Shown: positions 1,493 through 55,085 of the stretch, piece by piece
How positions within the stretch are numbered: the stretch's first letter is position 1
Layout of the letters: every line of letters starts with the position of its first letter
Virus record (IMG/VR): IMGVR_UViG_3300049217_000071
Span: 62,001 to 126,000 of that record
DNA length: 64,000 nucleotides
Reading direction: 5' to 3' (one strand)
Made by a program: the position numbers and the translations under genes
The notes under the pieces: generated by a model
Seen by the model: the letters and a program-made list of their open reading frames with translations, nothing else
Databases searched by the model: none
Told to the model about the DNA's origin: nothing

Positions 1493-1510
1493 ACTACTTA
1501 TATACCGCGT

Positions 1511-1858
1511 TCACTTCTCCTTTTTCTTCTTTCGTTTCTTAGACTTACCCCCCATTTTTTGATATACATCCATAACGACCGCCCATGGTTCGCTGTATTT
1601 TTTCCAATAAGGCTTGACAGCTTTCTTAGCGCGGTTCCAAGTTTTTTCACTAGCGACTGCACCCGGAGGATTATGGGACTTGTCGAAGGGGATGTATTCT
1701 TGGCTAGTTCCGTTTTCCTTGATCTCTTGGAATGTTTGTTCATCGATCCAACTAAGGTCTTCAGCCTTAACATCTTCAGGTTCTTTTCCTGCATAATGGG
1801 CCTCCGCTATTTTGATAGCAAATTCCTCTGCTAATTCGGCTAGTTTCTGTAAACTCAT
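1511..1858 (-). CDS. hypothetical basic phage protein (possible virion/internal protein)
   Basis: 115-aa ORF, Lys-rich tail, N-terminal KLAELAEEFAIKIA. Confidence 0.7.
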   Translation of the reverse strand: MSLQKLAELAEEFAIKIAEAHYAGKEPEDVKAEDLSWIDEQTFQEIKENGTSQEYIPFDKSHNPPGAVASEKTWNRAKKAVKPYWKKYSEPWAVVMDVYQKMGGKSKKRKKKKEK

Positions 1859-1880
1859 ACCCTAATACAAAGATAGTAAT

Positions 1881-2141
1881 ATGCAATTAGATTTCCAATT
1901 CCGAGGCGTCAGGTATATGCTCAACTTTGAGGATTATCTCTGTAAAGAATATGCGGAAAAGGGTGTCAAATCGGTAGAATTAAGAGTGTATTACACTCTA
2001 GCTCCCGAAAGTTTATATGCTTCTTCTATGAAGCTTATCAAGGATAATAAGATTGTCTGGGGTCAGTGGGACAATATGCATCTTCCTAAAGAAGCTCAAG
2101 ATCATTGTGATCGTATAATCAAACTGGCGGTTTTTGCATGA
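1881..2141 (+). CDS. hypothetical protein
   Basis: ATGA overlap with rnhB; ends IIKLAVFA. Confidence 0.6.
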   Translation: MQLDFQFRGVRYMLNFEDYLCKEYAEKGVKSVELRVYYTLAPESLYASSMKLIKDNKIVWGQWDNMHLPKEAQDHCDRIIKLAVFA

Positions 2142-2767
2142 TCGACAAACCATTTACTATTGGCTGTGATGATGTGGGTCACGGCAGTTTGGCTGGCCCC
2201 TTGGTTCTCGTGGGCGTCAGGGCGCCCAAGGATTGGGCCCTGGAGGGTCTCAACGATTCCAAGAAATTGTCCGCCAAGAAGCGTGAGGTCATGCGAGCTA
2301 AGCTGGGAAAACTGATCGAGGACAAGGTTATAACTTGGCACCTGGCCGAGCGCACCAATAACTTCATTGATCGATTTGGGGTAGGGGTAGCAATGAAAGA
2401 CGCCCTGGTGGAATGCTTTCACGCACTTTACCAGCCGGATTCATTGATAATTAGCGACGGAATTCTAAAATTTGACAACCTGGGAGTGGATGCTTACGAT
2501 ATAGAATCCGTTATCAAAGCGGATACTAAATTCCCAACCGTAATGGCGGCTAGCATTTTGGCCAAAACCTATCGTGATGAAAAGATGAAGACTTTTCATT
2601 TGCTTCATCCGATGTATGGCTGGGATCACAATGTGGGTTATGGATCCAAAGATCACCTGGAGGCTATTGCTAAGTATGGCCCTTGCCCTCTTCACCGATA
2701 CTCTTATGCTCCTATGAGACATATGACGATAGTGGATTCTAGCCAAACTTCATTCAAGGATTTCTAA
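2138..2767 (+). CDS. rnhB: ribonuclease HII
   Basis: GCDDVGHGSLAGP, LNDSKKLS, KAD...AASILAK..RD, GYG..H..A...G....HR. Confidence 0.95.
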   Translation: MIDKPFTIGCDDVGHGSLAGPLVLVGVRAPKDWALEGLNDSKKLSAKKREVMRAKLGKLIEDKVITWHLAERTNNFIDRFGVGVAMKDALVECFHALYQPDSLIISDGILKFDNLGVDAYDIESVIKADTKFPTVMAASILAKTYRDEKMKTFHLLHPMYGWDHNVGYGSKDHLEAIAKYGPCPLHRYSYAPMRHMTIVDSSQTSFKDF

Positions 2768-3013
2768 ATGTCAGAAGATAGTACCGAAACTAAAGACTCC
2801 GATAATTTACGCAGAATCAGAATGCTGGCCCGCAAAGTTTCTTTTTTGATGCAGCACCAGCATATTTTGCCGGATTTACAACATATGTTGGAGGAGATAT
2901 ATCCATCAGGCGTTGATGCTAGCGTCATCAACCGAGAGTCCCCAGAGTATTTATTGGGCGCTTATGAGGCCCTACTCAATCTAATTACAGACTTAGAAGA
3001 AAAAGGTCATTGA
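2768..3013 (+). CDS. hypothetical protein
   Basis: tightly packed ORF. Confidence 0.55.
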   Translation: MSEDSTETKDSDNLRRIRMLARKVSFLMQHQHILPDLQHMLEEIYPSGVDASVINRESPEYLLGAYEALLNLITDLEEKGH

Positions 3014-3303
3014 TGAAAACGGAATTTCCCAAGCTCCTCAAGGATATGCGTATCGCCCTGAACCCAGAGTTCAAGACTATTGTAAGCGACTCTACTCTGA
3101 CTGCCGATCAGTTTGACAAAGCCCTAATGGAAATTGAGGCCAAACAAGAGCAGATGGTCAAAGACCACGGATATACTCAGGAAGAGTTCTCTCAACTCAT
3201 CAAGGAACACTTCATTGATTTCTCCTCAACTAATCCTGACGAGTGGGTCATTAAGCTTGATACCGAGAATCCTCAGATCATTATTGGTTCCAAGACCAGC
3301 TAA
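3010..3303 (+). CDS. hypothetical protein
   Basis: tightly packed ORF. Confidence 0.6.
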   Translation: MMKTEFPKLLKDMRIALNPEFKTIVSDSTLTADQFDKALMEIEAKQEQMVKDHGYTQEEFSQLIKEHFIDFSSTNPDEWVIKLDTENPQIIIGSKTS

Positions 3304-3330
3304 TATCGTGATATATAGACTCAGCACCAT

Positions 3331-3405
3331 CGTGGTGTAGCATATTGGATGTGCGGCCGTCTCATAAGCGGTTATGAGTGGGTTCGATTCCCACCATCAC
3401 GACCA
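3331..3405 (+). tRNA. tRNA-Met/Ile2 (CAT)
   Basis: CGTGGTG/CATCACG acceptor, gccgt-ctCATaa-gcggt, GTTCGA T-loop, CCA; paired 1-72 so not an initiator. Confidence 0.9.
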
Positions 3406-3410
3406 TCTCT

Positions 3411-3851: not shown

Positions 3852-3891
3852 ACTCGTATATCATTTTAGTGGTATATAGGATACCGACAAT

Positions 3892-3966
3892 GGGCGATTA
3901 ACTCAGCGGTAGAGTGCAACCCTTACAAGGTTGAAGTCGGGGGTTCGAATCCCTCATCGCCTACCA
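3892..3966 (+). tRNA. tRNA-Val (TAC)
   Basis: cloverleaf, caacc-ctTACaa-ggttg, CCA. Confidence 0.95.
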
Positions 3967-6027: not shown

Positions 6028-6163
6028 ATTATCCTCTTAGTAAGAATCAAAACTTTCAATATAGCTAAACATTATGGCAGAAAAGTCATAGAATATTTCG
6101 TGGGATTTTGCCCTATTATTTTCCTTTCAATATCAACGCATAAGGTGATATAAATAGTAGCAC

Positions 6164-9864: not shown

Positions 9865-9899
9865 GGCTCTGGTAATACCGCGTTATATACGGTAGGTAT

Positions 9900-10153: not shown

Positions 10154-10194
10154 AATCCTTGGGCAAGCTGGTTTACTCACCACGCACCCACCTC
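10150..10194 (+). pseudogene. orphaned N-terminal stub of the 10939 gene
   Basis: MKSLGKLVYSPRTHL vs MKSIGKLVYNPRSHL at 10939. Confidence 0.9.
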
Positions 10195-10891
10195 AAGACA
10201 GATTCTGCAATGCAGAAATCTGTCCAACCTTCGCAAGAAAATTCTCTTGGGAGAGTGTTCCCTTCATTTTATTGCACGTGAAACAGCAGGATACGCAGTT
10301 GTCCAACTCATATCCTCGATCGTTATCGATTCGATCAATGCCGTTTCTAACCTCCCTGCCGACTTGTGTTTTGGTATGCGGCAGATCACCGCAATAAAAG
10401 CATCGAGCCGTGCATAGTTGTTTGAACTCATCAACAGTCATATCGAAATGAAGACTAGATTTTCTGTGCAGATCTGCCCTTCTAACGATGACCCTGGCGA
10501 CATAGGATCTGTATTCTGTGGGCCATGGGTCTTTTGAAATGGACTTTACCTTGTTATAGCAGCCACAAGATACCGTAGGAGATTTACCAGGTCCACTCTG
10601 TACTCTCAAGTTGCTAATCAATACCGTAGTGGTATTGCCACATTCACACCGGCACAATACAGTTGGGCATCCGTTTTTCCAAGTCCCTACTCTCGCTAAC
10701 ACCGTAAGCTTTCCAAACGTCTGTCCAACATACCTGTAAGGTCTTTCTGATAGGTGTGCACTCTCGATCAATCGTCTGACTGCATGTTCCGAAAGCTTCA
10801 ATCGTTTGGAAATGCTTTTTCGGCTATGACCGGCCGCCCACAGTTTGAATATCTCGTCCGTTTGAACCTGGCTAAAAACGATCCTTTTCAT
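10193..10891 (-). mobile_element. free-standing HNH endonuclease gene
   Basis: HTH, G.TFGKLTV, CRCECG, SCGC, CFYCG, NGIDRIDN..GY...NCVSCC..CN..K; GAGGTG RBS before ATG 10891. Confidence 0.9.
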
Positions 10892-10938
10892 CTTGCACCT
10901 CTCACCCATTATGCCCATATATAGCGAACAGATGCCAA

Positions 10939-11343
10939 ATGAAATCCATAGGGAAGCTAGTGTACAATCCTCGTAGTCATCTAGGATCGAGTGAAAAGTG
11001 GGCCATTTTGGCATGTGATGATGAGATTTCCAAATACTACAGGCATCTCTTCACCAAGGACTACCCGTATTTGAACGGAGAGCGAGTGGGCAAGCTGACC
11101 CGTCCGGTGTGGGGAACTCACATTTCTATCATTCGAGGGGAATATATTCCGAACTTCAAGCTATGGGGTCTGGACGCCAACAAGGTGATCGAGTTCACTT
11201 ACGAAGGTGGCGTTATAGACAACGGTGAATACTACTGGTTGAAAGTCAACTGTCCTTATATTGGAGATTTGCGCGAGAAGTATGGGTTGAAGAGGGAGCC
11301 GAAATTTGGTTTCCATTTGACTATCGGGAGAACCACAGAATGA
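10939..11343 (+). CDS. putative 2H phosphoesterase
   Basis: two Hx[ST] motifs: THISII and FHLTIG. Confidence 0.65.
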   Translation: MKSIGKLVYNPRSHLGSSEKWAILACDDEISKYYRHLFTKDYPYLNGERVGKLTRPVWGTHISIIRGEYIPNFKLWGLDANKVIEFTYEGGVIDNGEYYWLKVNCPYIGDLREKYGLKREPKFGFHLTIGRTTE

Positions 11344-12962: not shown

Positions 12963-12991
12963 GGCGATATATTTGGCATAGGAGATAAACT

Positions 12992-13282
12992 ATGCTAAAG
13001 CCACTCAGAGATTTCATCGTTGTATCGGTTGCCAAGAAGACGGAAGAGAAGACCCCCAGCGGATTACTGCATCTTCCCGGCAACATTGAAGAGAAGGTCG
13101 TCACTGGCCAAGTTGTTGCTGTAGGTTCCGGCTACTTGACAGACAGCGGAACCGTGGTTCCCTTGGAAGTCAAAGCCGGCGACAGTATCTTGTTCAACAA
13201 GCAGATGTCGGTAGAAGTCAAGCACGCAGGGGAAACAATGTTCCTTCTTCGTGAAGAGCACATTCTCAGCGTCATCAGCTAA
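12992..13282 (+). CDS. groES: co-chaperonin GroES
   Basis: LKPL.D, T.SGL.LP, G.VVAVG.G, PL.VK.GD, LRE..IL. Confidence 0.95.
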   Translation: MLKPLRDFIVVSVAKKTEEKTPSGLLHLPGNIEEKVVTGQVVAVGSGYLTDSGTVVPLEVKAGDSILFNKQMSVEVKHAGETMFLLREEHILSVIS

Positions 13283-20036: not shown

Positions 20037-20208
20037 CGGAATTGATAGAGTTGACAACGAGACGGGTTATATATTGGATAACTGTATTACGTGTTGTAAG
20101 ATATGCAATTACGCCAAATCTACGATGCCTTACGAAGATTTCATTACGTGGATCGATAATCTTGTCAAATATCGAGTATCACTAAATAATACGGAGAATG
20201 TCCTATGA
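20035..20208 (+). pseudogene. HNH endonuclease C-terminal remnant
   Basis: no start; NGIDRVDNETGYILDNCITCCKICNYAK, same family as the 10193 and 24278 HNHs; stop overlaps NAMPT ATG. Confidence 0.88.
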
Positions 20209-21602
20209 ATGAGAATTACCTGTTTGATACTGACAGCTATAAAGCAAGCCATTATCTTCAGTATCCCGAAAAAACCACGAGTATGTTTTCTTACGTCGAA
20301 AGCAGGGGCGGAGATTACAATGCAACCGTTTTCTTTGGGCTACAATACTTCCTCAAGGCTTATCTTACTTATCGCGTTACGCCCAAGGATGTGGAAGAAG
20401 CTAAAGAGTTCTATACTGCTCATGGCGTGCCATTCAATTATGATGGTTGGATGTATGTTGCTAAAGACCTAAAAGGTAGGTTGCCTGTCAGGATTAGGGC
20501 AGTGCCAGAGGGAACTATCGTTCCAACCCACAATATCTTGGTAAGCATCGAATCGACCGATCCTAAGGCCTTTTGGGTTGTTTCCTGGTTGGAGACAATG
20601 TTGCTACGATACGTGTGGTATGGAACTACCGTAGCCACCAGAAGTCGTAGAATTAGGCAGACAATCTTGGAAGCTTTGCGAAAGACTGCCGATGCTCCTG
20701 ATACAGAAATCAGCTTCAAACTTCATGACTTTGGTTCTCGTGGGGTGAGCAGCCAGGAAAGTGCTATGCTTGGAGGCGCAGCTCATCTCATCAATTTTAT
20801 GGGCAGCGATACCATCGCGGGCATCAGATGCGCTAACAAATACTACGACTGCCCGATGGCAGGTTTTAGTATTCCTGCTGCGGAACACTCTTCTATCACT
20901 TCGTGGGGTAAAGAACACGAGGTAGATGCGTATGCCAACATGCTAACACAGTTTGCCAAACCAGGAGCTTTGGTAGTTGTGGTAAGCGATAGCTATGATT
21001 TGTGGAATGCCTGTGAGCATCTCTGGGGCGAACAGCTCAAGCAGAAAGTTATAGATTCCGGTGCGACGGTTGTAATTCGTCCTGATAGTGGCCATCCTCC
21101 GGCCGTAGTGCTCAAGACCCTACAGATATTGGATAGTAAGTTTGGACACACAATCAATACTAAGGGGTATAAAGTCTTGAACAATGTTAGGGTTATCCAA
21201 GGTGATGGCATCAATGAGCACTCGATAAGAGACATTCTGAATGAGTTTATGTGGGATAAATACAGTGCCACCAATGTTGCCTTTGGTATGGGTGGTCAGC
21301 TATTGCAAGGTCTCAACCGAGACACTCTCAAGTTTGCTATGAAGTGTTCTTCCATTACTGTCAATGGTGAAGTGCGAGATGTCTTCAAGGATCCGATCAC
21401 CGATCACGGTAAAGTAAGCAAGGCAGGACGCTTGGATCTGGTCAAACGAGATGGTCATTTTGAGACGATTGAGATTAGCCGAGGAGACCAGGCTTCTCAC
21501 GACAACTTCAGTGAGATGCAAACTGTCTATGAGAACGGTCAGATTTTGATTGACGATACGTTCGAGAATATCCGTGCTCGTGCTAAAGGAGAAATGGTAT
21601 AA
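20205..21602 (+). CDS. nadV: nicotinamide phosphoribosyltransferase (NAMPT)
   Basis: TDSYKASH, HDFGSRG, SIPAAEHS, VSDSYD, IRPDSG, IQGDG, FGMGG.LLQ, RDT..FA.K. Confidence 0.95.
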   Translation: MNENYLFDTDSYKASHYLQYPEKTTSMFSYVESRGGDYNATVFFGLQYFLKAYLTYRVTPKDVEEAKEFYTAHGVPFNYDGWMYVAKDLKGRLPVRIRAVPEGTIVPTHNILVSIESTDPKAFWVVSWLETMLLRYVWYGTTVATRSRRIRQTILEALRKTADAPDTEISFKLHDFGSRGVSSQESAMLGGAAHLINFMGSDTIAGIRCANKYYDCPMAGFSIPAAEHSSITSWGKEHEVDAYANMLTQFAKPGALVVVVSDSYDLWNACEHLWGEQLKQKVIDSGATVVIRPDSGHPPAVVLKTLQILDSKFGHTINTKGYKVLNNVRVIQGDGINEHSIRDILNEFMWDKYSATNVAFGMGGQLLQGLNRDTLKFAMKCSSITVNGEVRDVFKDPITDHGKVSKAGRLDLVKRDGHFETIEISRGDQASHDNFSEMQTVYENGQILIDDTFENIRARAKGEMV

Positions 21603-24228: not shown

Positions 24229-24273
24229 TGCTCCTACTATGTCAATATCGCGGTATATATGATAGTAGGAGCA
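24229..24273 (+). promoter_or_regulatory. 12-bp hairpin occluding the HNH RBS, with promoter motif in the loop
   Basis: TGCTCCTACTAT / ATAGTAGGAGCA; loop contains CGCGGTATATA. Confidence 0.75.
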
Positions 24274-33130: not shown

Positions 33131-35002
33131 ATGTCATCAAATCGCATTACCGAGCTGGCTGATAAGATTACCCAGGCTCGATTGGACTATTACAATGGTC
33201 AGCCAACCGTTTCTGACAAGATTTTCGATGCTTGGGCCGATGAGCTTCGCACCCTGGACGCTAATCACATAGCTTTGACGGCTGTAGGTGCTCCTGTCGG
33301 CCCTTCCGAATGGAAGAAAGCTAAGCACCAGATCCCGATGGGATCTCTCAACAAAGTCAATCAACCTGCCGAAATGTTGGACTGGGCCAGTGATAAGAAC
33401 TGCAAGTCCTGGTTTATGACGGAAAAGCTGGACGGACTCTCTATAGAAGTGATCTATGAGGGTGGTAAGGTGGTACAAGCCATTACCCGAGGTGATGGTG
33501 AGACGGGCGAAGACATTACGGTCAACGTGATTCGTATGGGTGGAGTCAATCCCGATTTGAAAACTGACTTCAATGGTTCCCTTCGTGGTGAAATCATTAT
33601 GAAGAAGAGCATTCATCAGAAGTTCTTCGCTGATAAAGCCAATCCTCGCAATGCAGCTTCTGGTGTTTCCAAGCGTTTGGATGGTGTGGATGTGGATAAG
33701 CTCGACATTCTCTTCTACCAAGTTTTGGGTGATGTAGATTTCAAAACGGAAGAAGACCAGTTCAAGTGGTTGCAGAAGCATAAAGTCGGCACTCCCAACT
33801 ATTGGATCTGGAGTTCGGCTCTTGCCATCAATGTTATGTGGCGTGAATACCAAGACAAAGAGCGCGATAAGCTGGATTATGATATCGACGGACTGGTGGT
33901 TCGTATCAATGACATGGCCGATCAAATGGCTTGTGGTGATAAAGACCTCCGCCCCTTGGGTGCTATGGCCTTCAAGTTTGACAATGAGACCCGTGAGAGC
34001 ACTATCAAAGACATCATCTGGCAGGTGGGCAACAGTGGACGCCTAACTCCGGTGGCTGTGGTGGAGCCCGTTCTCCTGGTGGGAGCTATGGTTTCCCGAG
34101 CCAGCTTGTATAACATTGCCTACATTGAGGAATTGGGTTTGGATATCGGGGCCCGCGTCCTGGTGGCCCGAGCTAATGACGTGATTCCTCGCATTGAGGA
34201 GTTGGTCAAGGGTACCAAGACGGTAGCCAAGATGCCCAAGAAGTGTCCTGATTGTGGTGGAATAGTGGATATGCAGGGTGAGAACCTGATTTGCACCAAC
34301 ACGGAGAACTGCCGATCCCAGATCATTGGTCGCATCAAGAACTGGATCAAAGAACTCAACCTGTTGGAGTGGGGGGATTCTTTGGTGGAGAAGTTGGTGG
34401 ATGCTAAGAAGGTCAAGAACATTGCTGACCTCTATACTCTTCAAGTGGATGACATTTCCAAGTTGGATCGCTTGGGAGATAAGACGGCCAAGAAGTGTTT
34501 GGATATCTTGAACGCTAATAAGAATGTAGCTTTGGAAGTCTTTTTAGGCGCTTTATCCATTCCAACTATTGGGCAATCGACGATTAAATTAATAATGAAA
34601 GATGGTTGTGATACTTTAGAAAAGTTTGGTCAGTTAAGTAGCGTTCAATTTGAGCAGGTATCGGGAGTAGGTCCGGTCAAAGCGCGATTTTTAGCTGATG
34701 GACTCAAACATAATCAGCAACTAATCCTTGATTTGTTAAAAAATGGAGTGGAGATCAAAGAAATTGTTGATGGCAAATTGACTGGTAAAAGTTTTGCTAT
34801 TACTGGAACGCTCTCTATCAAGCGCGCTGAGGTTGAAAAATTGATTCAAGACAATGGCGGTGAAGTGAAAAGTAGCGTTGGAAAAGGATTGAACTACCTA
34901 ATTATTTCTGATCCACAATCTACCAGCAGTAAAGCACAAGCCGCCCGAAAGTTGGGTACCGTTCTTATTAACGAGGCACAATTTTTAGACTTGATTAGCT
35001 AA
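33131..35002 (+). CDS. ligA: NAD+-dependent DNA ligase
   Basis: EKLDG, TRGDG..GEDIT, NPRNAA, DGLVV, Zn finger, HhH, BRCT. Confidence 0.97.
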   Translation: MSSNRITELADKITQARLDYYNGQPTVSDKIFDAWADELRTLDANHIALTAVGAPVGPSEWKKAKHQIPMGSLNKVNQPAEMLDWASDKNCKSWFMTEKLDGLSIEVIYEGGKVVQAITRGDGETGEDITVNVIRMGGVNPDLKTDFNGSLRGEIIMKKSIHQKFFADKANPRNAASGVSKRLDGVDVDKLDILFYQVLGDVDFKTEEDQFKWLQKHKVGTPNYWIWSSALAINVMWREYQDKERDKLDYDIDGLVVRINDMADQMACGDKDLRPLGAMAFKFDNETRESTIKDIIWQVGNSGRLTPVAVVEPVLLVGAMVSRASLYNIAYIEELGLDIGARVLVARANDVIPRIEELVKGTKTVAKMPKKCPDCGGIVDMQGENLICTNTENCRSQIIGRIKNWIKELNLLEWGDSLVEKLVDAKKVKNIADLYTLQVDDISKLDRLGDKTAKKCLDILNANKNVALEVFLGALSIPTIGQSTIKLIMKDGCDTLEKFGQLSSVQFEQVSGVGPVKARFLADGLKHNQQLILDLLKNGVEIKEIVDGKLTGKSFAITGTLSIKRAEVEKLIQDNGGEVKSSVGKGLNYLIISDPQSTSSKAQAARKLGTVLINEAQFLDLIS

Positions 35003-35078
35003 AATCTATGCATATTATCACCTATCATTGGGATATTTATAGGATATATACGCCTATGAAGACTTAATGTGAGGAACG

Positions 35079-35669
35079 ATGAGGAAACGCAAAGTATATT
35101 TAGCTGATTCACCAGGACGCCCATCATCACGAGCAGTGTATTTCAATGGGGCTGTGTGGAAACCTGTCGATGACAAGACAAACTATTCGGTGGCTGATGT
35201 AGTTGAATGTTCGACTAATGGTAATCTTCTTTTGGTTGGTAATGAAACTTGGGAAGAAGTTTTTAGGAATAAAGGCGCTGTTAAGTGTAAAATACAAGAG
35301 TGTGAGAATGGGCCCCCTTTCATTAGGGGATTATGTAATACTCATTATCAACGAGCGCAGAGATGTGGTGATGAAAATTACATACCATATATGGCTCCCA
35401 AAGGAACTGGATTCACTCATAAATCAGGATATCGTATAGTTTCTGATGGCAATGGTGGTAAAATTAAAGAGCACCGTTTGGTAATGGAAAAGCATTTAGG
35501 TCGCAAACTTTTACCAGAAGAAAATGTTCACCACAAAAATGGAAACCGCTCTGATAATAGATTAGAAAATCTTGAATTGTGGAGTACAAAACAACCACAA
35601 GGTAAAAGAATAGAAGATTTAGTGGTGTATGCCAAGGAAATATTGAAGCTTTATGGAGATGAATTATGA
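35079..35669 (+). mobile_element. free-standing HNH endonuclease gene
   Basis: EHRLVME.HLGR.L...E.VHHKNG.R.DNR.ENLELW. Confidence 0.92.
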
Positions 35670-37013: not shown

Positions 37014-37297
37014 TTGCTCTCCTTGCCATTTTCGGTTTAGCCTTTGCTATCAAAGAGACCTCCGGTCCTTTTGATGTCTTGGATAAGCTGCGTGGTTTAC
37101 TGATGCGAAACAAATACGTGGGAGTTTTCTTCTACGGTTTGCTTTCCTGCTATTTCTGCGTGGGTTTCCACTGCGGGTGGATCGTTTATCTATTGAGCGA
37201 GGAAAATTACACGTGGCAATTTTTTATGCTTTATGGTTTGGCTGGCGGAACGGTTTGTTTAATCATTGATGCCTTGCTCTCGAAGCTCCATCAATAA
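37001..37297 (+). CDS. membrane protein (DUF1360-like)
   Basis: GPF....LR, LLSCYFCVGFH, TM helices. Confidence 0.7.
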   Translation: MHLLIALLAIFGLAFAIKETSGPFDVLDKLRGLLMRNKYVGVFFYGLLSCYFCVGFHCGWIVYLLSEENYTWQFFMLYGLAGGTVCLIIDALLSKLHQ

Positions 37298-37964
37298 CAT
37301 TTTGTTTGGCTGATAACGGTCGCAAATTATCTAATGCCCAACATTTTTGGAAGTTAGCATCATTCATAGAAGAATAAAGCAGAGTTGATTGAGGGACAAT
37401 ATGATCAATCTGCCAAGTCCAAGTGGATGAATCATTATCATCCCAAATTTTATGATTGTACGAGCCATGATTTTGCCAGGTCATCCACGGCTCAAAATGC
37501 TTTTCGAGATGCGATTTTAATTCTTGGAAAGAATACGGAAGATATTTAGTTATCGATCCGTTTTTGGATATGGCTTTCTGAACGCTTCTACTAATAATTT
37601 TTCTCAATCGAAAAGCGATATCGTTTTGTCTTCTCTTTCTATCTTGCTCTCTTCGTATTGCCTTATGTTCTGCACGATAATTTCTGTTGTACTCTGAGAT
37701 TTTATCTTTATTCTTTTTCTTGTATGCAGATTTTCTCTTCTTCACCACTTCTGCGTGGTTCAGTCGATATCTTTTTTCGTTTTCTCTACACCGTTCTTTG
37801 TTGTTTTGGTGCCACTCAGTAGTTTTGTTATTTTGACATTCTATACAATAGGGGGCCCAATAAATAGAGATGACACCCGATTTTTTTATGTATTTTCTTT
37901 GCTTAAAGTTGTCTACTGTTAGTTCCAAACTACGATTACAGCTAATACAAATCTTGTGTTTCAT
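37263..37964 (-). mobile_element. free-standing HNH-type endonuclease gene
   Basis: CISC, YCIEC, HLEKHF..WMTW.N.G, WQIDHIVP, CWAL.NLRPL....N. Confidence 0.88.
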
Positions 37965-37988
37965 ATATAGTTATATATCGGACCGAAT

Positions 37989-38069: not shown

Positions 38070-38416
38070 TCCCGTATCGGATTTATGAGATACTGGTTGA
38101 TTATCACGACGTTGTTGCTGTCTGGATGTGGCGGTGAGTTATGGTTTACTCCTAACGGGCATCAATAGAAATACATAATATTCCTCTGTATCTTCCAAAG
38201 AATGATACTATTTTTGTTTTTACTACTGGTAATGAAATGACCGCAGCATTACAAAATGTGAATAAAAATAAAGTAAGACTAATTGATCGAAAGATTATTT
38301 CTGGTCTTGTTGATAATAATGAAAATTTTTGGTTGCAGGTTAATGCATTGCTATATGATACTTTTACTGATTAAATAAATGGATATATTATGGCTAAAGT
38401 AATTAAATAAGCAGAC

Positions 38417-39880
38417 ATGGGAAGCGTCAAAGTTGAAGAATCTATTAAACAATGGACTCTTAACTATACTGACATAATTTTGAATAGTAATAAATTCTAT
38501 TCACTTGAGGTAGTTAAAACTAATAAAGGCTATTTCTTATACACCCAATATGGCAGGGTCGGAGGCACCAAAGCCAAGGAATATCGCCAATGCTCCGATC
38601 AAGCTGATGCCGAATCTGAAGCTACCAAAATCGTCAAAGCTAAAACCAAGAAAGGATATGTAGAAGTATCTTTGGTCAAGTCGGATGTCGGAAGTGATGC
38701 TGCCCAAGCTAAAATAGAAAAAGTCTCAGCTACCACTGAACAACTAAAGAAAGCTGGTATTACCGTTAAAGAAGAGCCTGCCGTTGCCAGCAAACTTCAT
38801 ACAGAGGTTCAGGATTTAGTCAGAACATGGTTCGGCGTAACTCAAGAGTTCGTCGATCTTAACCTTGACACATCCAAATGTTCTTTAGGACAACTTTCAA
38901 TTCTACAGATTACCAAAGGCAAAGACCTATTGGATGAAGCTCGCAAAATTGTTCATATGACAAAACCAGATGAACAAGAGCTTAATAAGTTGACTAATTC
39001 TTACTATAGCAATATTCCTCACAATTTTGGTTATACCAGAATTGATGCCAACGCTTTGCGTTTGGACTCAGACGTTAAGATTGATAAGGCTTTTGATATG
39101 CTTGACGTTCTAAATCAAGCTAAAGATGTCGAAGCAGTTATCTCCAAGAAGAGTGCAGTCGATGCACAGTATGCTACTCTCAATGCCGACCTTGAGTTCA
39201 TTGAGCAGGGTACTCCCACGTTCAAGTGGATTGAGAAGATGGTTCTGGAAACCCGAGCCAGCAACCACAGCGGCTTAGGTAAACTGAAGGTTCACAAGGT
39301 CTTCCGTGTCACTCGTCACGATGAGGACAAGCGATTCATTGAGAATTGCCAAGTCATCGCCAAGGAGTGCGGTAAGTTCGTGCCCTCTGATGTGTATGCT
39401 GGTTTGGTCAAGAACCGTCCTGATGTTCCCAAGGCATTGGAAGACCTCTACCACAAAGCAAATGTCCTTCCTGGTTGGCACGGAACTCGTAGAGCCAATA
39501 TGATTGGTATTACCACCAAGGGACTTCTTATTCGTCCTTCTGGTGTTATTCACGCTGGTAGTATGTTTGGAGATGGCTGTTATTTTGCTTCATCTTCGTC
39601 AAAATCAATTAATTATTGTGATGTTAAGGGATCATATTGGGCACAAGGAAATAATAAAACAGGATATCTATTTCTGTGTGATGTAGCTTTTGGAAATCAA
39701 AAAATGGCTACTGGCTCACATTATTATAATTCAAATAACATCAAGCCATATCACAGCGTATGGGCTAAAGCTGGTCAAGGCGGAGTTATTAATGATGAAA
39801 TGATTACTTACCATGCTACGGGACCAAATCAGCAGCATGCTATAAAATATATAATCGAGTTTGAGACGCAGGTGAAGTAA
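38417..39880 (+). CDS. PARP-family ADP-ribosyltransferase (WGR + regulatory + catalytic)
   Basis: NKFY..E, QYGRVG, K.KKGY; LGQLS..QI; YYS.IPH; WHGT, G.MFG.G.YFA..SSKS.NY, NDE (H-Y-E). Confidence 0.93.
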   Translation: MGSVKVEESIKQWTLNYTDIILNSNKFYSLEVVKTNKGYFLYTQYGRVGGTKAKEYRQCSDQADAESEATKIVKAKTKKGYVEVSLVKSDVGSDAAQAKIEKVSATTEQLKKAGITVKEEPAVASKLHTEVQDLVRTWFGVTQEFVDLNLDTSKCSLGQLSILQITKGKDLLDEARKIVHMTKPDEQELNKLTNSYYSNIPHNFGYTRIDANALRLDSDVKIDKAFDMLDVLNQAKDVEAVISKKSAVDAQYATLNADLEFIEQGTPTFKWIEKMVLETRASNHSGLGKLKVHKVFRVTRHDEDKRFIENCQVIAKECGKFVPSDVYAGLVKNRPDVPKALEDLYHKANVLPGWHGTRRANMIGITTKGLLIRPSGVIHAGSMFGDGCYFASSSSKSINYCDVKGSYWAQGNNKTGYLFLCDVAFGNQKMATGSHYYNSNNIKPYHSVWAKAGQGGVINDEMITYHATGPNQQHAIKYIIEFETQVK

Positions 39881-40140
39881 TGAAAACAGATGACGCTCTC
39901 TATAAAGAGATACAAAAAGATATAGCTAATGGTGTAGCGGTAGTTCTTCGAGAAACTATCACATTCGATGGTATAATCAAACAGCAATATATCGTAAGAA
40001 TGTTTTTAGATGGAATCAATATTATGCTTTGGAAATACTCAGACATCACATCTAGGTGGGAATCCAAGTCAATGAGTTGGCTACAGTTGGACGCGCAAGA
40101 AATAAAGACGCTACAAACATTTCTACTCAAGTTCAACTAA
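39880..40140 (+). CDS. hypothetical protein
   Basis: TAATG coupling to PARP. Confidence 0.55.
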   Translation: MKTDDALYKEIQKDIANGVAVVLRETITFDGIIKQQYIVRMFLDGINIMLWKYSDITSRWESKSMSWLQLDAQEIKTLQTFLLKFN

Positions 40141-40806
40141 GTGGGGCCAAGTAATTCCTCTAATAGCTCGTGAGATAGCTGATTCACTAACATTTAACAT
40201 TTTGCTCAGTTGAACGAATGTCATCCCTTCTCGATGTAATTTTCGTGCTTGAAGAACGATTTCGTCGGTAAGTTTGGCAAAGCTATTGGCACTACCTAAG
40301 ATTTTTTTACCATAGAATGGATTATCGGCCCCAAAGAACTTTCTATTTGGATTTTGGCTCATTAGCTGTTTAGATTGTTGGCTGTGTTGTTTTCCGAAGA
40401 AACTGTTTCCGGCACCCTGTCTTTGTTCTGACATTGATTGTTTGGTTTCTTCTGAATGATGTTTTCCGAGCATACTTGGTGTTCGAGGTTTTATCACTAC
40501 CGTTTTGGTAGCTAACTGTCCGCCTCCCGTTAGGTTATAGCCAAACTCTTTTTTGTTAGACCGGAAAAATTGAACCCAAAATTGTTCAGCCTCATCTATT
40601 GTTTCTTTTGTGTGTTGCTCAATTTCTATAAACTCAAAATTATCTAAACCATATTTTCTGATGCTTCGATATATTGGCTTGTTGTTGAGCTTCGTGAAAG
40701 CTTCGTATTTATGGCGGCCCTGGCGCCTTTTCATATTGTTAGTTTGCCCTACATAAAGTTTTGAGTTTGTTTTGTTGCGGATAATATAGATAGAATACAT
40801 AGTCAT
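40123..40806 (-). mobile_element. GIY-YIG endonuclease gene (NUMOD3-like repeats)
   Basis: SIY.I.N..N.KLYVGQT, GYNLT.GG, GKHHSEETK, FFGKQHS. Confidence 0.92.
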
Positions 40807-40867
40807 ATTCCTATATCATCATATTGATAGGATGTGGCGGTGCAGGCCGAAATAAGTCGAGGAAATA

Positions 40868-46025: not shown

Positions 46026-46045
46026 GCCGCGATATATACCTTTGT

Positions 46046-46750
46046 ATGAAGGCAACCGTAGAAAAAGTCATCCAAACTTATCTTGAAGTAAAAAGTATCC
46101 GTAAAGCCGCCGAATTGACAGGCTATTCAAAATCTGGTGTTCAGCATTTGTTGACGACCAATAATGTCGCCTTGTTTCCACGCAGCAGGGGTGGGGCCGA
46201 AAATTCTTCTCGCAAAGCCATTTTGGATTTGGACGCTTCTAATCCAAGAAGGTTAGTTCGTAATACCGGCTATATGACGGATTTATACATTGACAAGAAG
46301 ATGTCAGTCCCTGAAATTGCTCTCCAATTAGGAATAAGTACCGCAACAGTTTTTACTGGTTTAGAACGGTGTGGCATTGCATCAAGAACAATAGAAGAAG
46401 CATTGACCGGTAAGCCAAGGCCAGCCTCACAAGGATCCAAAAACCATAACTGGAAAGGTGGACTATCTGGCTGGAGGAAACTGGCCCGTGGTAGGCTCAA
46501 CGAACATTTTGTTCGCCCAATAATGAAACGAGATAACTTCTCCTGTCAGTGGTGTGGCTCGAAGAAGAATATCGTAGTTCATCACCACAAACGCTCGTTT
46601 ATGGAGATTGTCAATCTAGTCAGACAACAGTGTGATGAAAAAGATATAGACCAGTTTGTCAAACTCATAATTAGCGAACATTCATTAGATGACGGAATTA
46701 CGCTTTGCAAGAAGTGCCACGACAATCACCATAAGGAACACGGGAAATGA
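46046..46750 (+). mobile_element. free-standing HNH endonuclease gene
   Basis: two HTH, NHNWKGG, RDNF.CQWCG, VHH, GITLCKKCH...H. Confidence 0.9.
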
Positions 46751-47220: not shown

Positions 47221-47429
47221 ATTGGTGGTAATTATGCTCTTACAACCGTGCCACGAATTATCCGACTTTCCAGTGAAGCTTTGGTGGCCTGATACTGTTG
47301 TAGGTGCACTGATATGCACTGTGATATGTCTGGTGATTATTACGGTGATTTGGGCACTGGCCGCTCTCTATATAAAGATTTTCGATCTCTAAGGTTGGCA
47401 ATATCGAGATATATTAGAGACACAGGAAT

Positions 47430-48911: not shown

Positions 48912-49026
48912 GTTTTTGGATGCACCTGTTGCTGGCGGTGAGTTTGACGCTGACTTTTAGCCTCTTGGCTTATCAGTTATTTTTCGATGAATAACATAGC
49001 AATAACGAGATATATACATACCAAAT

Positions 49027-51578: not shown

Positions 51579-51610
51579 AAGCTATCAATAGCTTGATATA
51601 GTTAGAGTAT

Positions 51611-51685
51611 GCCTCTGTGGTCCAAGGGATGGGCAGCCGCCTTCTAAGTGGCCTTATGTAGGTTCGAATCCTACCAGAGGTGCCA
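51611..51685 (+). tRNA. tRNA-Arg (TCT)
   Basis: gccgc-ctTCTaa-gtggc, CCA. Confidence 0.92.
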
Positions 51686-52381: not shown

Positions 52382-52403
52382 AGCTCCGCAAGGAGCTATT
52401 TTT
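52382..52403 (+). terminator. intrinsic terminator after tRNA cluster
   Basis: AGCTCC-gcaa-GGAGCT then ATTTTT. Confidence 0.7.
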
Positions 52404-53089: not shown

Positions 53090-53103
53090 TAGAATGGAGC
53101 TAC

Positions 53104-53409
53104 ATGCCCCGACCAGAATTCGTAACGAATGAAGACCTACAACGATGGTCAGACAAGATAGATAACGATCCACTGATGTCGCCAGCCTTGGCGCAAAGCC
53201 CTCTAATAAGAGAAGTCTGTTTAGCAGGACGGTGGTTGAACGAGAAACTGATAGAGCTGGATTGTCCCGACCATATCATTGGCTGTATTATGTATACGGC
53301 CGGAGAGATTTGTTTTGGACGTTCCGATCCTTGGAAAGTGCATCAAGATATCCTGGATAGGTATGTCAATAACACGCTCGTGATTGATCCGCCAGATGAA
53401 TCCAACTGA
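53104..53409 (+). CDS. hypothetical protein
   Basis: GGAG RBS. Confidence 0.6.
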   Translation: MPRPEFVTNEDLQRWSDKIDNDPLMSPALAQSPLIREVCLAGRWLNEKLIELDCPDHIIGCIMYTAGEICFGRSDPWKVHQDILDRYVNNTLVIDPPDESN

Positions 53410-53818
53410 AACTAAACTCTCGGCTATGGAGAGCTTCGTCAAACTATTTGATGAAGAGCAGCCCACCTGTATCTATTGCAAAACTCTCTGTGGGATCAGT
53501 TCACGGACAGTAGCTAATGATGGTAAGATTTGGACTACCAATACCTACAGTTGTATAGAGTGTAAAGAAACTGTCAATACCTATGTAGTGGATGGTCTCC
53601 AGACTCTTTTTGATCCGCTTAGGAAGATGCCAGTTTGTTATGACTTCCGATTGTCTTGCAATGAGCTGGTTCTGTGGTATGGTGATAACCCAGAAAACTT
53701 CTTGGTTGGCAATAGGGTGATGAGCGTACATTGTGCGAAAATCCCCACTTTTGTCATGGATTTTTCCGACAAAAACAAACTGTATCGTAAGCTCAAGACT
53801 TACCTACTATTTTCCTGA
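53396..53818 (+). CDS. CxxC protein with C-terminal KLKTYLLFS
   Basis: shared C-terminus. Confidence 0.7.
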   Translation: MNPTETKLSAMESFVKLFDEEQPTCIYCKTLCGISSRTVANDGKIWTTNTYSCIECKETVNTYVVDGLQTLFDPLRKMPVCYDFRLSCNELVLWYGDNPENFLVGNRVMSVHCAKIPTFVMDFSDKNKLYRKLKTYLLFS

Positions 53819-53851
53819 ATAGCTGCTTCAATCTTTTTTCTTTGCATCACA

Positions 53852-53879
53852 TTGACAGTAATTGTATCGTGAGTATATT
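53852..53879 (+). promoter_or_regulatory. sigma70-type promoter
   Basis: TTGACA-16nt-TATATT. Confidence 0.7.
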
Positions 53880-53912
53880 GTAAGGGTATCTTTTGATTAG
53901 GGAAGGAATAAC

Positions 53913-55046
53913 ATGCCGAAGGATCTAACCGCACCGACTATGTCCTCTTCAGACTTCAATCTGGAGAAATTGAATACGAAAGACTTGTCCGAGCATTTGG
54001 GCGCCTCCATTCAGATGGGCGGCAATATTGCCGTCTTCGGTCGCAGAGGCACCGGTAAAACGGAAATCGCCAAATACGAAATCAAGAAAGCAGATTTTAC
54101 GGAAGTCTATATCAACCTCTCCGTTTTGGAACGAGTAGATATGGGCGGTTATCCCAACATTATGGCCGCTGGTCAACGGAAGAAGTTCGTTGACTTTTTG
54201 CTCCCCGAGTTCTATGAACAGATGATGGAAGGCAAGAAGCCAGTCGTTGCTCTGTTAGACGAAGTGGATAAGGCCGACCCCAGTTTATGGGCGCCACTCT
54301 TGGAGTTCACGCAATTCCGCAGCATCAACCATCGTCCCCTTCCTAAGTTGCATGCCATTATTATGACCGGCAACTTGATTTCAGAAGGCGGCTCTCGTCC
54401 CAGCTTGCCGCTGTTGGATAGAGCAGAAAAGTATTTAGTGGAAGCTGACGCCACCTCTTGGTTGGATTGGGCCGGTAAGTCAGGTCGCATTCATCCTTCC
54501 ATTACGGCCTATGTCAACGACCATCCTAAGGATTTGTTCGGGGCTGTTGACCCAGAAGAGCGTTATGCCGATCCTTCCCCTCGTGGTTGGGATAGAGCCT
54601 CTCAAATTCTCTTCAAGGGAGAAGAGCGCGGTTGGAGCACCTACCTGCTCAACAAGAAGGTGGCAGGATGCGTGGGCAAAGATGCCGGCATCAAGTACTC
54701 TAACTACTATGAGCACTATATGGAACTTCTACCGATGGTGGAAGACATCTATCAGGGCCGAGACGTTTCTGGCAAGTACGCCACCTTGGAGCCTACCAAG
54801 AAATTGGTAGCTTGTATGATCACCTGTGCCCGTTTGGCAACTCAGTTGGATCAAGTCAAGGAGTCTGATGAACTGCCGGTTTCTATCAAGCACGTCGGCA
54901 AGTTCCTGCACAAGGTCTCTTACGAAAACGTTTTGGTGGCTGTGAGAAGTCAAGTTCAGATTGAGCGTATGGTCAAATTCAATCTTGACGAACATCCTGA
55001 TTGGGCTAATGTATTGAGCAAGATCAACAAGCAGGTAGATCAATAA
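53913..55046 (+). CDS. MoxR-like AAA+ ATPase
   Basis: GRRGTGKT, LLDEVDKA, TGN, PL.DR, PSPRGW. Confidence 0.9.
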   Translation: MPKDLTAPTMSSSDFNLEKLNTKDLSEHLGASIQMGGNIAVFGRRGTGKTEIAKYEIKKADFTEVYINLSVLERVDMGGYPNIMAAGQRKKFVDFLLPEFYEQMMEGKKPVVALLDEVDKADPSLWAPLLEFTQFRSINHRPLPKLHAIIMTGNLISEGGSRPSLPLLDRAEKYLVEADATSWLDWAGKSGRIHPSITAYVNDHPKDLFGAVDPEERYADPSPRGWDRASQILFKGEERGWSTYLLNKKVAGCVGKDAGIKYSNYYEHYMELLPMVEDIYQGRDVSGKYATLEPTKKLVACMITCARLATQLDQVKESDELPVSIKHVGKFLHKVSYENVLVAVRSQVQIERMVKFNLDEHPDWANVLSKINKQVDQ

Positions 55047-55085
55047 GACCTATCCCCCAATTGATATATACTCAATGGAGTCTCA

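What the first reader, a model, noticed from the sequence alone, without database searches (positions are those of the whole stretch)
1499..55070. Phage-specific promoter-like motif CG(C/A/T)G-(A/T/G)-TATATA before tRNAs and endonucleases
Instances: 1499-1509(-) CGCGGTATATA, 3307 CGTGATATATA, 9879 CGCGTTATATA, 24249 CGCGGTATATA, 46028 CGCGATATATA, 47405 CGAGATATATT, 49006 CGAGATATATA. Weaker ones occur at 10917(-), 12963, 35042, 37972(-), 38381 and 55062. All are intergenic and oriented toward the next gene, with no TTGAC -35. At 1492, 37964 and 46046 the ATG follows within 6-7 nt and has no RBS, implying leaderless mRNAs.
Basis: partly seen in the sequence, partly recalled or inferred. Interest (0 to 1): 0.6.

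Follow-up and report, generated by a model that had tools for sequence, protein, structure and literature searches.

The report
Clade-wide phage promoter with leaderless starts
The flagged motif is the strongest version of a promoter used throughout an uncultivated giant phage and its relatives: a TATATA box with a G two bases before it and an AATA box one DNA turn upstream, placed just ahead of tRNA genes, homing-endonuclease genes and start codons that have no ribosome-binding site.

Summary
All seven strong instances are at the stated coordinates (6 exact matches against 0.15 expected). The window lies in a 268-kb fragment (about 62% complete) of a huge metagenomic phage with 53 tRNA genes and a tmRNA.

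It is a GC-rich spacer that relatives do not keep. The conserved element is bipartite: (c)T(G/A)nnAATA(t/a), three variable bases, G(A), then TATA(T/A)n. The AATA-N6-YATA spacing is rigid, with 27 upstream sites at N6 against 2-9 at other spacings.

The element recurs in four related phage contigs (31-48% GC). It sits upstream of orthologous genes at identical distances (odds ratio 8.8, p=7e-7). It lies 7-15 nt before tRNA 5' ends, and exactly 7 nt before start codons far more often than at other distances, which supports leaderless mRNAs.

A second, canonical class (cCTTGACA-N16-TAnnnT) precedes early-type genes such as rIIA, the NAD ligase and a PARP-like gene.

Most likely the motif is a -35-independent, extended -10-like promoter class read by the host's multisubunit RNA polymerase. 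A phage factor may take part: complete relatives encode a 209-aa sigma. No RNA data exist, so start sites and the recognising factor are inferred. I rate it a new variant of a known kind, of moderate interest.

The parts
1499..1509 (-). Promoter core CGCGGTATATA (hexamer 1504-1499). The ATG at 1492 follows after 6 nt with no Shine-Dalgarno. It drives the short HNH endonuclease ORF 1109-1492 (minus). The upstream AATA box is absent here.
3297..3317 (+). Full bipartite promoter: box CAGCTAATAT, spacer CGTGA, hexamer TATATA. tRNA-Met starts at 3331, 13 nt after the hexamer.
3858..3878 (+). Promoter (GGTATATA, weak box) 13 nt before tRNA-Val(tac) at 3892.
6134..6154 (+). Promoter (GTGATATAAA) 9 nt before tRNA-Gly(tcc) at 6164.
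9869..9889 (+). Full bipartite promoter: CTGGTAATAC, CGCGT, TATATA. tRNA-Arg(ccg) starts at 9900, 10 nt after the hexamer.
10903..10923 (.). Palindromic TATATA at 10918-10923 between divergent genes. On the plus strand it lies 15 nt before the ATG at 10939 (2H phosphoesterase-like). On the minus strand it lies 26 nt before the Shine-Dalgarno-preceded ATG at 10891 of the HNH ORF. The direction is undecided.
12964..12973 (+). GCGATATATT, 18 nt before the Cpn10 gene (12992-13282). The same core sits at the same 18-nt distance upstream of the orthologue in relative G001.
24239..24259 (+). Full bipartite promoter: ATGTCAATAT, CGCGG, TATATA. The ATG at 24278 of an HNH endonuclease follows after 18 nt, with an AGGAG Shine-Dalgarno, so this mRNA has a leader.
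35041..35050 (+). Weak site AGGATATATA, 28 nt before the HNH_3 endonuclease gene 35079-35669, which has a GAGGA Shine-Dalgarno.
37972..37979 (-). GATATATA on the minus strand. The ATG at 37964 follows after 7 nt with no Shine-Dalgarno. It drives the endonuclease VII-like ORF 37263-37964 (minus).
38374..38389 (+). AATA-N6-TATATT, 27 nt before the PARP-like gene 38417-39880. That gene also has a canonical class B promoter at about 38045.
40810..40830 (-). Bipartite promoter: CTATCAATAT, GATGA, TATAGG. It lies 9 nt before the ATG at 40806 of the GIY-YIG homing endonuclease 40123-40806 (minus).
46028..46038 (+). CGCGATATATA. The ATG at 46046 follows after 7 nt with no Shine-Dalgarno. It drives the HTH-HNH endonuclease 46046-46750. 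The upstream box is weak (GCGTAAGC).
47395..47415 (+). Near-consensus promoter: TTGGCAATAT, CGAGA, TATATT. tRNA-Leu(caa) starts at 47430, 14 nt after the hexamer.
48996..49016 (+). Near-consensus promoter: ATAGCAATAA, CGAGA, TATATA. The three-gene tRNA-Leu cluster starts at 49027, 10 nt after the hexamer.
51582..51602 (+). Promoter: CTATCAATAG, CTTGA, TATAGT. It lies 8 nt before tRNA-Arg(tct) at 51611.
55061..55070 (+). TTGATATATA, 15 nt before the gene 55086-56780 (DUF2201 metallopeptidase/VWA-like). The same core sits at the same 15-nt distance upstream of the G001 orthologue.

Best explanation
These sites are transcription promoters of one clade-specific class, which I call class A. They are used across the whole phage genome by a bacterial-type multisubunit RNA polymerase, that is, the host core enzyme.

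**Anatomy**, numbered with the hexamer at -12 to -7:
- T(G/A)nnAATA(t/a) at about -26 to -18;
- G at -14, usually A at -13;
- TATA(T/A)n.
- There is no -35 element at 16-18 nt.

**Inferred mechanism.** The sites work like extended -10 promoters. The G(-14)+TATA core is read by regions 2 and 3 of a sigma-70-family factor, and region 4 contact with a -35 box is dispensable. The AATA box lies one helical turn upstream, on the same face of the DNA. It is the clade-specific strength or specificity element, most likely read by a phage-encoded factor. Two candidates exist: the 209-aa sigma found in complete relatives, and the conserved 146-aa protein with a sigma-region-4/LuxR-like helix-turn-helix.

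**Consequences.** Initiation about 7-8 nt after the hexamer gives tRNA precursors with leaders of only about 0-8 nt. Where an ATG sits 6-7 nt after the hexamer, it gives leaderless mRNAs.

**Temporal logic.** Together with a separate canonical class B (cCTTGACA-N16-TAnnnT) in front of early-type genes, this suggests a T4- or P23-45-like switch from -35-dependent to -35-independent promoters.

**Shown:** the motif, its spacing, its positions and its conservation. **Inferred:** promoter activity, start sites, the factor and the timing.

**How the confidence splits.** That these are promoters for a bacterial-type polymerase: about 0.85. That a phage factor is also involved: about 0.55-0.6. The confidence given for this explanation refers to the full statement.
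For: **Enrichment.**
- Bipartite pattern AATA-N6-YATAWW: 11 in the window against 1.7 expected.
- Position-weight-matrix hits of at least 14 bits: 30 in the contig against 1.3 in Markov shuffles, 27 of them intergenic.
- TATATA and GATATATA are the most enriched intergenic k-mers.

**Rigid spacing.**
- AATA-N(k)-YATA in upstream regions peaks only at k=6: 27 sites against 2-9 at other k in this phage.
- The complete relative G001 gives 27 against 2-16.

**Fixed geometry to products.**
- 39 of 123 tRNA/tmRNA genes in four genomes have GnYATA within 30 nt upstream, against about 4-5% expected. Most lie 7-15 nt from the mature 5' end. Infernal confirms those 5' ends.
- Hexamer-N7-ATG coincides with 11 called gene starts, against about 2 per other spacing. 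In G001 the count is 18 against about 7.5.

**Conservation.**
- The same architecture precedes tRNAs in G001 and G003 (31% GC) and in G004 (48% GC).
- Among 188 reciprocal-best orthologue pairs between this contig and G001, the core is upstream in both in 17. Fisher odds ratio is 8.8, p=7e-7. Distances are identical or nearly so in most of the 17 pairs (18/18, 15/15, 7/7, 7/7, 7/7, 6/6, 8/8, 9/9), while flanking sequence has diverged.

**Distinct from class B.**
- Class B is TTGAC(A/G)-N16-TAnnnT with T frequent at the -7 position (32 of 55 aligned CTTGAC sites). It precedes the NAD ligase, rIIA and the PARP-like gene.
- In class A the -7 position is A 46%, T 26%, G 17%.

**Polymerase and factors.**
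- No phage RNA polymerase domains were found in this contig or in two nearly complete relatives.
- Relatives encode a 209-aa sigma with regions 2 and 4.
- All three genomes encode a 146-aa protein with a sigma-region-4-like helix-turn-helix.

**Bacterial host.** The phage carries a tmRNA, and many of its genes use Shine-Dalgarno sequences.
Against: - No transcript data exist. All 15 sequencing runs that hold this DNA are DNA libraries, so no start site is observed.
- The host is unknown, so class A cannot be compared with host promoters.
- T at -7 is poorly conserved, which is unusual for a primary-sigma -10 element. T at -15 is absent from this phage's strongest sites.
- A box at -22 to -19 is too close to the hexamer to be a -35 element bound by sigma region 4 in the normal geometry. 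Its reader is therefore speculative.
- The sigma gene is not on this contig.
- Gene starts come from my own simple gene caller.
- The position weight matrix was trained on upstream regions, so its intergenic enrichment is partly circular. The spacing, shuffle and cross-genome tests are not.
Confidence: 0.58

Rival explanations
1. Plain host promoters. Class A sites are ordinary extended -10 promoters read by the host primary sigma alone. The AATA box would be only an AT-rich spacer or DNA-shape feature that helps DNA opening. No phage factor and no temporal switch would be involved.
For: - In the AT-rich relatives the core is often TGATATATA or TGTTATAAT, which is the textbook TGnTATAAT extended -10.
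- No phage polymerase was found.
- Class A sites are spread over the whole genome, including replication and structural regions.
Against: - T at -7 is weak in class A (26%), whereas it is the preferred base at that position in the same phage's class B promoters.
- The AATA box is sequence-specific and rigidly spaced in genomes of 31% and 45% GC. That is more than general AT-richness.
- Related genomes keep a dedicated sigma and a sigma-region-4-like protein.
Confidence: 0.28
2. One reading: promoters for a phage-encoded RNA polymerase, either single-subunit or a highly diverged multisubunit or two-barrel enzyme.
For: - The motif is about 21 nt and contiguous, and it sits very close to the start of the product.
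- This contig is only about 62% complete.
- Several very large proteins of the relatives have no family assignment.
Against: - There are no matches to T7-like RNA polymerase, Rpb2_6 or Rpb1_2 domains in this contig or in relatives that are 100% and 97% complete.
- The unassigned giant ORFs lie among baseplate and tail-fibre genes.
- The bases between box and hexamer and around the start are not conserved, unlike T7-type promoters.
- The geometry (hexamer, then 7 nt, then the start) is that of sigma-dependent initiation.
- The Pfam control for the T7-like family matched in none of the 14 control genomes, so that one negative is weak.
Confidence: 0.07
3. Not a promoter. The motif would be an RNA-level signal, such as an AU-rich RNase E or processing site ahead of tRNAs or an AU-rich translation enhancer replacing the Shine-Dalgarno. 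Or it would be a DNA signal linked to the mobile endonuclease genes, such as a target site or cassette border.
For: - The motif is AU-rich and lies just 5' of tRNAs and start codons.
- Many instances flank free-standing homing-endonuclease genes.
Against: - The same element serves tRNAs, endonucleases and conserved core genes such as Cpn10.
- It has an upstream DNA-type bipartite structure with helical-turn spacing.
- It is conserved at orthologous, non-mobile positions.
- A translation enhancer would have no role before tRNAs.
Confidence: 0.05

Closest known systems
Extended -10 (TGnTATAAT) sigma-70 promoters, for example E. coli galP1 and the -16 region of Gram-positive promoters (from established knowledge)
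   Same: - A TATA-type hexamer is preceded by a conserved G at -14, with T at -15 in the AT-rich relatives.
- No -35 element is present at 16-18 nt.
- The product starts about 7 nt after the hexamer.
   Different: - T at -7 is not conserved (A > T > G).
- T at -15 is missing in this phage's strongest sites.
- There is an extra sequence-specific AATA box at -22 to -19 with rigid spacing.
Thermus phage P23-45 middle and late promoters, with gp39/gp76 control (from established knowledge)
   Same: The phage carries two promoter classes. Canonical -35/-10 sites are followed by -35-independent extended -10 sites read by host RNA polymerase. This is a likely basis for a temporal switch.
   Different: - No homologue of those regulators was tested here.
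- P23-45 early genes use a phage polymerase, and none was found in this clade.
- The upstream AATA box has no counterpart.
T4 middle promoters (MotA box plus -10, sigma appropriation by AsiA/MotA) and T4 late promoters (TATAAATA, gp55) (from established knowledge)
   Same: - A bipartite phage promoter in which a non-canonical upstream box replaces the -35 element.
- An AT-rich -10-only flavour.
- Use in front of tRNA and free-standing endonuclease genes.
- Early and later promoters occur in tandem, for example class B followed by class A before the tRNA-Thr cluster.
   Different: - The box sequence (AATA, not TGCTT) and its position (about -22, not -30) differ.
- There are no MotA or AsiA domain matches.
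- TATAAATA itself is not enriched.
Leaderless mRNAs, for example lambda cI from PRM and the abundant cases in Actinobacteria and Deinococcus (PMC4007540)
   Same: - A -10 hexamer lies 6-7 nt before the AUG.
- No Shine-Dalgarno is present.
- The base before the A of the ATG is T, as expected for a start site.
   Different: - Here the arrangement is a recurrent design in a huge phage that otherwise uses Shine-Dalgarno sequences.
- It is conserved at orthologous genes across relatives.
- Start sites have not been measured.

Membership tests
Extended -10 sigma-70-type promoter | A -10 hexamer of TATAAT type with conserved A at -11 and T at -7 | tested here: inconclusive
   T-12, A-11 and T-10 are at 75-95%. 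Position -7 is A 46%, T 26%, G 17%.
Extended -10 sigma-70-type promoter | TG at -15/-14 | tested here: inconclusive
   G-14 is at 64% overall and present in all strong sites. T-15 is frequent in relatives (TGATATATA) but is C, A or T in the window's strongest sites.
Extended -10 sigma-70-type promoter | Independence from a -35 hexamer at 16-18 nt | tested here: met
   None of the class A sites is picked up by the sigma-70 scan, whose counts are at background. The upstream box lies only 5-6 nt from the G(N)TATA core.
Extended -10 sigma-70-type promoter | Transcription starts 6-9 nt after the hexamer | not testable with these tools
   No RNA runs hold this DNA. Indirect support comes from the N7-ATG peak and the 7-15 nt distance to tRNA 5' ends.
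T4 MotA-dependent middle promoter | MotA box (TGCTT core) centred at -30, about 12 bp from the -10 element | tested here: not met
   The box is T(G/A)nnAATA, ending 5-6 nt before the G(N)TATA core and centred near -22.
T4 MotA-dependent middle promoter | MotA and AsiA proteins encoded by the phage | tested here: not met
   No match at or above the cut-off for the MotA C-terminal domain (PF09158) or AsiA (PF09010) in this contig or in two near-complete relatives.
T4 late promoter (gp55) | TATAAATA octamer at -13 to -6 | tested here: not met
   TATAAATA occurs 6 times on the plus strand and 4 on the minus strand in the contig and did not rank among the enriched intergenic 8-mers. The class A core is G(A)TATAT(A), and the ATG lies 7 nt after it.
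T4 late promoter (gp55) | gp55-type sigma, gp33 and a sliding-clamp activator | not tested
   No family accession was at hand. The relatives' 209-aa sigma has regions 2 and 4, unlike gp55.
Leaderless mRNA | Promoter -10 element 6-8 nt upstream of the start codon, with no Shine-Dalgarno | tested here: met
   Met at window 1492 (minus), 37964 (minus) and 46046. Contig-wide there are 11 cases at N7. Orthologue pairs keep 6/6, 7/7 and 8/8 spacing, and their alignments begin within the first few residues (position 1 in most).
Leaderless mRNA | Primary 5' end at the A of the start codon | not testable with these tools
   No RNA data.
Single-subunit (T7-like) phage RNA polymerase promoter | T7-like RNA polymerase gene present | tested here: not met
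   PF00940 gives no match in this contig, G001 or G002. The control genomes did not match either, so sensitivity is unverified.
Single-subunit (T7-like) phage RNA polymerase promoter | Contiguously conserved promoter of about 20 bp running through +1 | tested here: not met
   The bases between box and hexamer and the bases after the hexamer are not conserved, either within the genome or between relatives.

The most novel reading that the evidence does not exclude
The compact bipartite element (AATA box, then a YATA core exactly one helical turn later) is read by a phage-encoded specificity factor. Candidates are the 209-aa sigma of this clade and its conserved 146-aa sigma-region-4-like protein. 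The geometry, with an upstream box at about -22, is not known for any sigma-70-family holoenzyme. It would form a new route by which huge phages retarget host RNA polymerase. It would also drive tRNA precursors with almost no leader and leaderless mRNAs.
Probability: 0.3. Interest if true: 0.65.

Novelty: new variant of a known kind. Interest (0 to 1): 0.45.

Why it matters
Huge uncultivated phages are known almost only from gene content, and how they schedule transcription is unexplored. This work gives a testable promoter grammar for one clade:
- a canonical class before early-type genes;
- a -35-independent class with a clade-specific upstream box before tRNAs, homing endonucleases and many other genes.

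The grammar improves gene-start and operon annotation and predicts leaderless translation in a phage that otherwise uses Shine-Dalgarno sequences. It also names two candidate regulators to test.

It shows as well that each free-standing endonuclease gene, including those on the opposite strand, carries the phage's own promoter. That explains how these selfish genes are expressed.

If a phage factor reads the box at about -22, this would be a new promoter geometry for bacterial RNA polymerase.

Tried and rejected
**Archaeal BRE/TATA promoter.** Rejected. The hexamer lies only 7-15 nt from tRNA 5' ends, where an archaeal TATA box would sit about 25 nt from the start. The phage also carries a tmRNA, which is a bacterial feature.

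**T7-like promoter.** I noticed that TAATAC...TATA resembles the T7 promoter. Rejected, because the middle of the motif is not conserved and no T7-like polymerase was found.

**Sigma-28/sigma-D -10 element (GCCGATAA/T).** Some sites read CCGATAT, but the CG shifts by two bases between sites, and no TAAA lies at the 15-nt spacing of sigma-28/sigma-D promoters upstream of them. This was judged by eye on the listed sites and not pursued.

**Phage polymerase in giant ORFs of relative G001.** One protein has a DxDGD motif. The ORFs lie among baseplate and tail-fibre genes and have no family match, so there is no support.

**Near-identical phage records.** None were found.

**Host identification through the NAD-dependent ligase.** The best bacterial matches are only about 30% identical and come from several phyla, so the result is uninformative.

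**Expression data.** No RNA run holds this DNA.

**First motif search.** An EM run seeded only with TATATA converged on an over-broad motif in this contig and drifted in the AT-rich relative. It was replaced by seeded runs and by the spacing test.

**Large protein searches.** The three large-database protein searches (search for homologous proteins, the search of protein representatives, the protein-atlas search) and structure prediction were not used, because no claim here rests on them.

Full report
**Context.** The window is bases 62,001-126,000 of a 268,344-bp linear IMG/VR virus contig that CheckV estimates to be 62% complete. GC content is 44.7%. My gene caller places 346 of 378 genes on the plus strand. 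The contig carries 53 tRNA genes and a tmRNA, 17 of the tRNAs inside the window. The tmRNA and the frequent Shine-Dalgarno sequences point to a bacterial host. The DNA occurs in moss, lake-water and soil metagenomes, and no RNA library holds it. No close phage record exists. Proteins are distantly similar to those of other large phages.

**Observation.** These are the only exact matches in the whole contig. CGAGATATATT at 47405 is also there. The weaker sites all contain GATATAT(A/T) or TATATA.
- The downstream features are tRNA-Met, tRNA-Arg and tRNA-Leu (twice), with 5' ends confirmed by Infernal.
- The other downstream features are HNH, endonuclease VII-like and helix-turn-helix-HNH homing-endonuclease genes.
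- The three proposed leaderless starts (1492 minus, 37964 minus, 46046) have the ATG 6-7 nt after the hexamer, no Shine-Dalgarno and no alternative ATG start nearby.

**What the motif really is.**
- An EM run on all 195 upstream regions gave cT(A/G)nnAATA(t/a)-N3-G(a)-TATAT(a), with about 64 sites.
- A scan with this matrix finds 30 sites of at least 14 bits, against 1.3 in Markov shuffles; 27 are intergenic.
- Because the matrix was trained on upstream regions, I added independent tests. AATA-N(k)-YATA in upstream regions peaks sharply and only at k=6, with 27 sites against 2-9 at other k. AATA-N6-YATAWW occurs 11 times in the window against 1.7 expected. TATATA and GATATATA are the most enriched intergenic k-mers.
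- The two AT-rich blocks start exactly ten bases apart, so they face the same side of the helix.

**A second promoter class.** CCCTTGAC is also enriched between genes. Aligning intergenic CTTGAC(A/G) sites from four genomes, without choosing a register, shows T-A-n-n-n-T exactly 16 nt downstream; among the 55 aligned sites the T that opens TAnnnT occurs in 43 and the closing T in 32. This is the universal sigma-70 consensus. In the window it precedes the NAD-dependent DNA ligase (33131), an rIIA homologue (57885), the PARP-like gene (38417) and two unknown genes.

**Geometry to products.**
- Across four genomes, 39 of 123 tRNA/tmRNA genes have GnYATA within 30 nt upstream, where about 4-5% is expected. 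Most lie 7-15 nt from the mature 5' end. These are the first genes of tRNA clusters.
- For protein genes, the distance from hexamer to ATG shows a single peak at 7 nt: 11 called gene starts against about 2 per other spacing. In the relative G001 the count is 18 against about 7.5.
- Most of these ATGs are preceded by GT, so the A of the ATG follows a pyrimidine, as expected of a start site.
- If initiation is 7-8 nt after the hexamer, the mRNAs are leaderless and the tRNA precursors have leaders of only 0-8 nt.

**Relatives.** A helicase query found six related IMG/VR contigs. I fetched G001 (447,763 bp, 100% complete, 31% GC), G003 (31% GC) and G004 (48% GC).
- This contig is collinear with G001 positions of about 78-300 kb, at about 52% mean protein identity.
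- In all of them, tRNA clusters are preceded by the same architecture: cTAATA(t)-N3-GATATAnn in the AT-rich genomes and CTGGTAATAAGGCGGTATATA in G004.
It is therefore spacer composition and not a recognition element. G at -14 and the AATA box persist, and T at -15 is common in relatives.
- Class B is also conserved, often at orthologous genes.
- Among 188 reciprocal-best orthologue pairs, the core is present upstream in both genomes in 17 (Fisher odds ratio 8.8, p=7e-7). Distances to the ATG are the same or nearly so. This footprint across genomes with very different base composition is the strongest evidence for function.

**Who reads it.**
- No T7-like, Rpb2 or Rpb1 polymerase domains occur in this contig or in relatives that are 100% and 97% complete. 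The relatives' unassigned giant ORFs lie among baseplate and tail genes. Host core polymerase is therefore the likely enzyme.
- G001 and G002 encode a 209-aa sigma-70-family protein with regions 2 and 4, next to the small subunit of ribonucleotide reductase. It lies at G001 382.5 kb, outside the part covered by this contig. Its absence here is therefore expected.
- In G001 that sigma gene has a class B site one gene upstream and an AATA-N6-TATAAC site directly upstream.
- All three genomes also encode a 146-aa protein with a sigma-region-4/LuxR-type helix-turn-helix. It is followed by a conserved class A leaderless gene.
- MotA and AsiA domains are absent.
- A box at -22 to -19 cannot be bound by sigma region 4 in its usual position. 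Either a separate phage protein reads it, or it acts through DNA shape.
- My weighting is: host polymerase directed or assisted by a phage factor, about 0.55-0.6; host primary sigma alone, about 0.28; a phage polymerase, about 0.07; not a promoter, about 0.05.

**Comparison with known systems.**
- The core behaves like an extended -10 promoter, but T at -7 is weak and there is an added upstream box.
- The two-class layout parallels Thermus phage P23-45 and T4 (early -35/-10 sites, then -35-independent sites). No defining component of those systems was found.
- phiKZ early promoters are described as an extended -10 box with a T-rich upstream motif, and no phiKZ transcript was leaderless (PMC8244752). 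That phage uses its own polymerases, which this clade lacks.
- Leaderless mRNAs with a -10 element just upstream of the AUG are common in Deinococcus (PMC4007540) and in Actinobacteria. Here they appear as a conserved design in a phage that otherwise uses Shine-Dalgarno sequences.

**Verdict.** The promoter and leaderless interpretations are well supported by comparative evidence but unproven at the RNA level. 'Phage-specific' recognition remains open. This is a new variant of a known kind (a -35-independent phage promoter class) and is of moderate interest.

Noticed in passing
window 27627, 33021, 38045, 41795, 57811 (plus strand): A second promoter class with the canonical sigma-70 form, (g/c)cCTTGAC(A/G)-N16-TAnnnT. 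It precedes an unknown gene, the NAD-dependent DNA ligase, the PARP-like gene, another unknown gene and rIIA. It is conserved in relatives and probably marks early promoters.
   Followed up: yes
window 38417-39880 (+); also 20205-21602 and 33131-35002: A phage-encoded PARP-like protein with WGR, PARP regulatory and PARP catalytic domains. The same window holds a nicotinamide phosphoribosyltransferase and an NAD-dependent ligase. Together they suggest manipulation of the NAD+ pool, possibly as counter-defence.
   Followed up: partly
window 1109-1492(-), 10193-11014(-), 24278-24853, 35079-35669, 37263-37964(-), 40123-40806(-), 46046-46750: Seven free-standing homing-endonuclease genes (HNH, endonuclease VII-like, GIY-YIG) in 64 kb. 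Four lie on the strand opposite to almost all other genes. Each has its own class A promoter.
   Followed up: partly
contig 161750-161822 and 163289-163362 (outside the window); G001 212881 and 212960: Two tRNAs with a CUA anticodon (amber suppressors, which ARAGORN labels Pyl), conserved in the relative. Coding density under the standard code is 89%, so wholesale TAG recoding is not evident. Late-gene TAG readthrough was not examined.
   Followed up: no
contig 157740-158091 (outside the window): A phage-encoded tmRNA with the tag ADEFAFAEAA, placed just after a tRNA-Thr cluster. That cluster has a class B promoter followed by a class A promoter.
   Followed up: no
contig 33569-33647; G001 108213: tRNA-like genes that ARAGORN calls with four-base anticodons (taat, gttt). 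Each occurs once in two related genomes.
   Followed up: no
all tRNA genes of the window, e.g. 3329-3330, 9898-9899, 47428-47429: Nearly every tRNA is preceded by A-T or A-C at positions -2 and -1. The tRNAs also appear to encode their 3' CCA. With the promoter so close, the predicted 5' leaders are only 0-8 nt, which is unusually short for RNase P substrates.
   Followed up: partly
window 52382-52397 (+): A clean intrinsic terminator (6-bp GC-rich stem followed by a T run) lies directly after the last tRNA-Arg of the cluster. It closes the tRNA transcription unit.
   Followed up: no
window 10918-10923, 24254-24259; contig 33846-33851: The TATATA hexamer is its own reverse complement. At several divergent intergenic regions the same hexamer scores as a promoter core on both strands, so bidirectional use is possible.
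   Followed up: no
whole contig versus G001, G003, G004: Collinear relatives with about 52% mean protein identity range from 31% to 48% GC. That is an unusually wide compositional spread within one phage clade.
   Followed up: partly
window 20063-20073 (+): CGGGTTATATA is preceded by a perfect TTGACA at only 11 nt spacing, 132 nt upstream of the nicotinamide phosphoribosyltransferase gene. It fits neither class cleanly.
   Followed up: no
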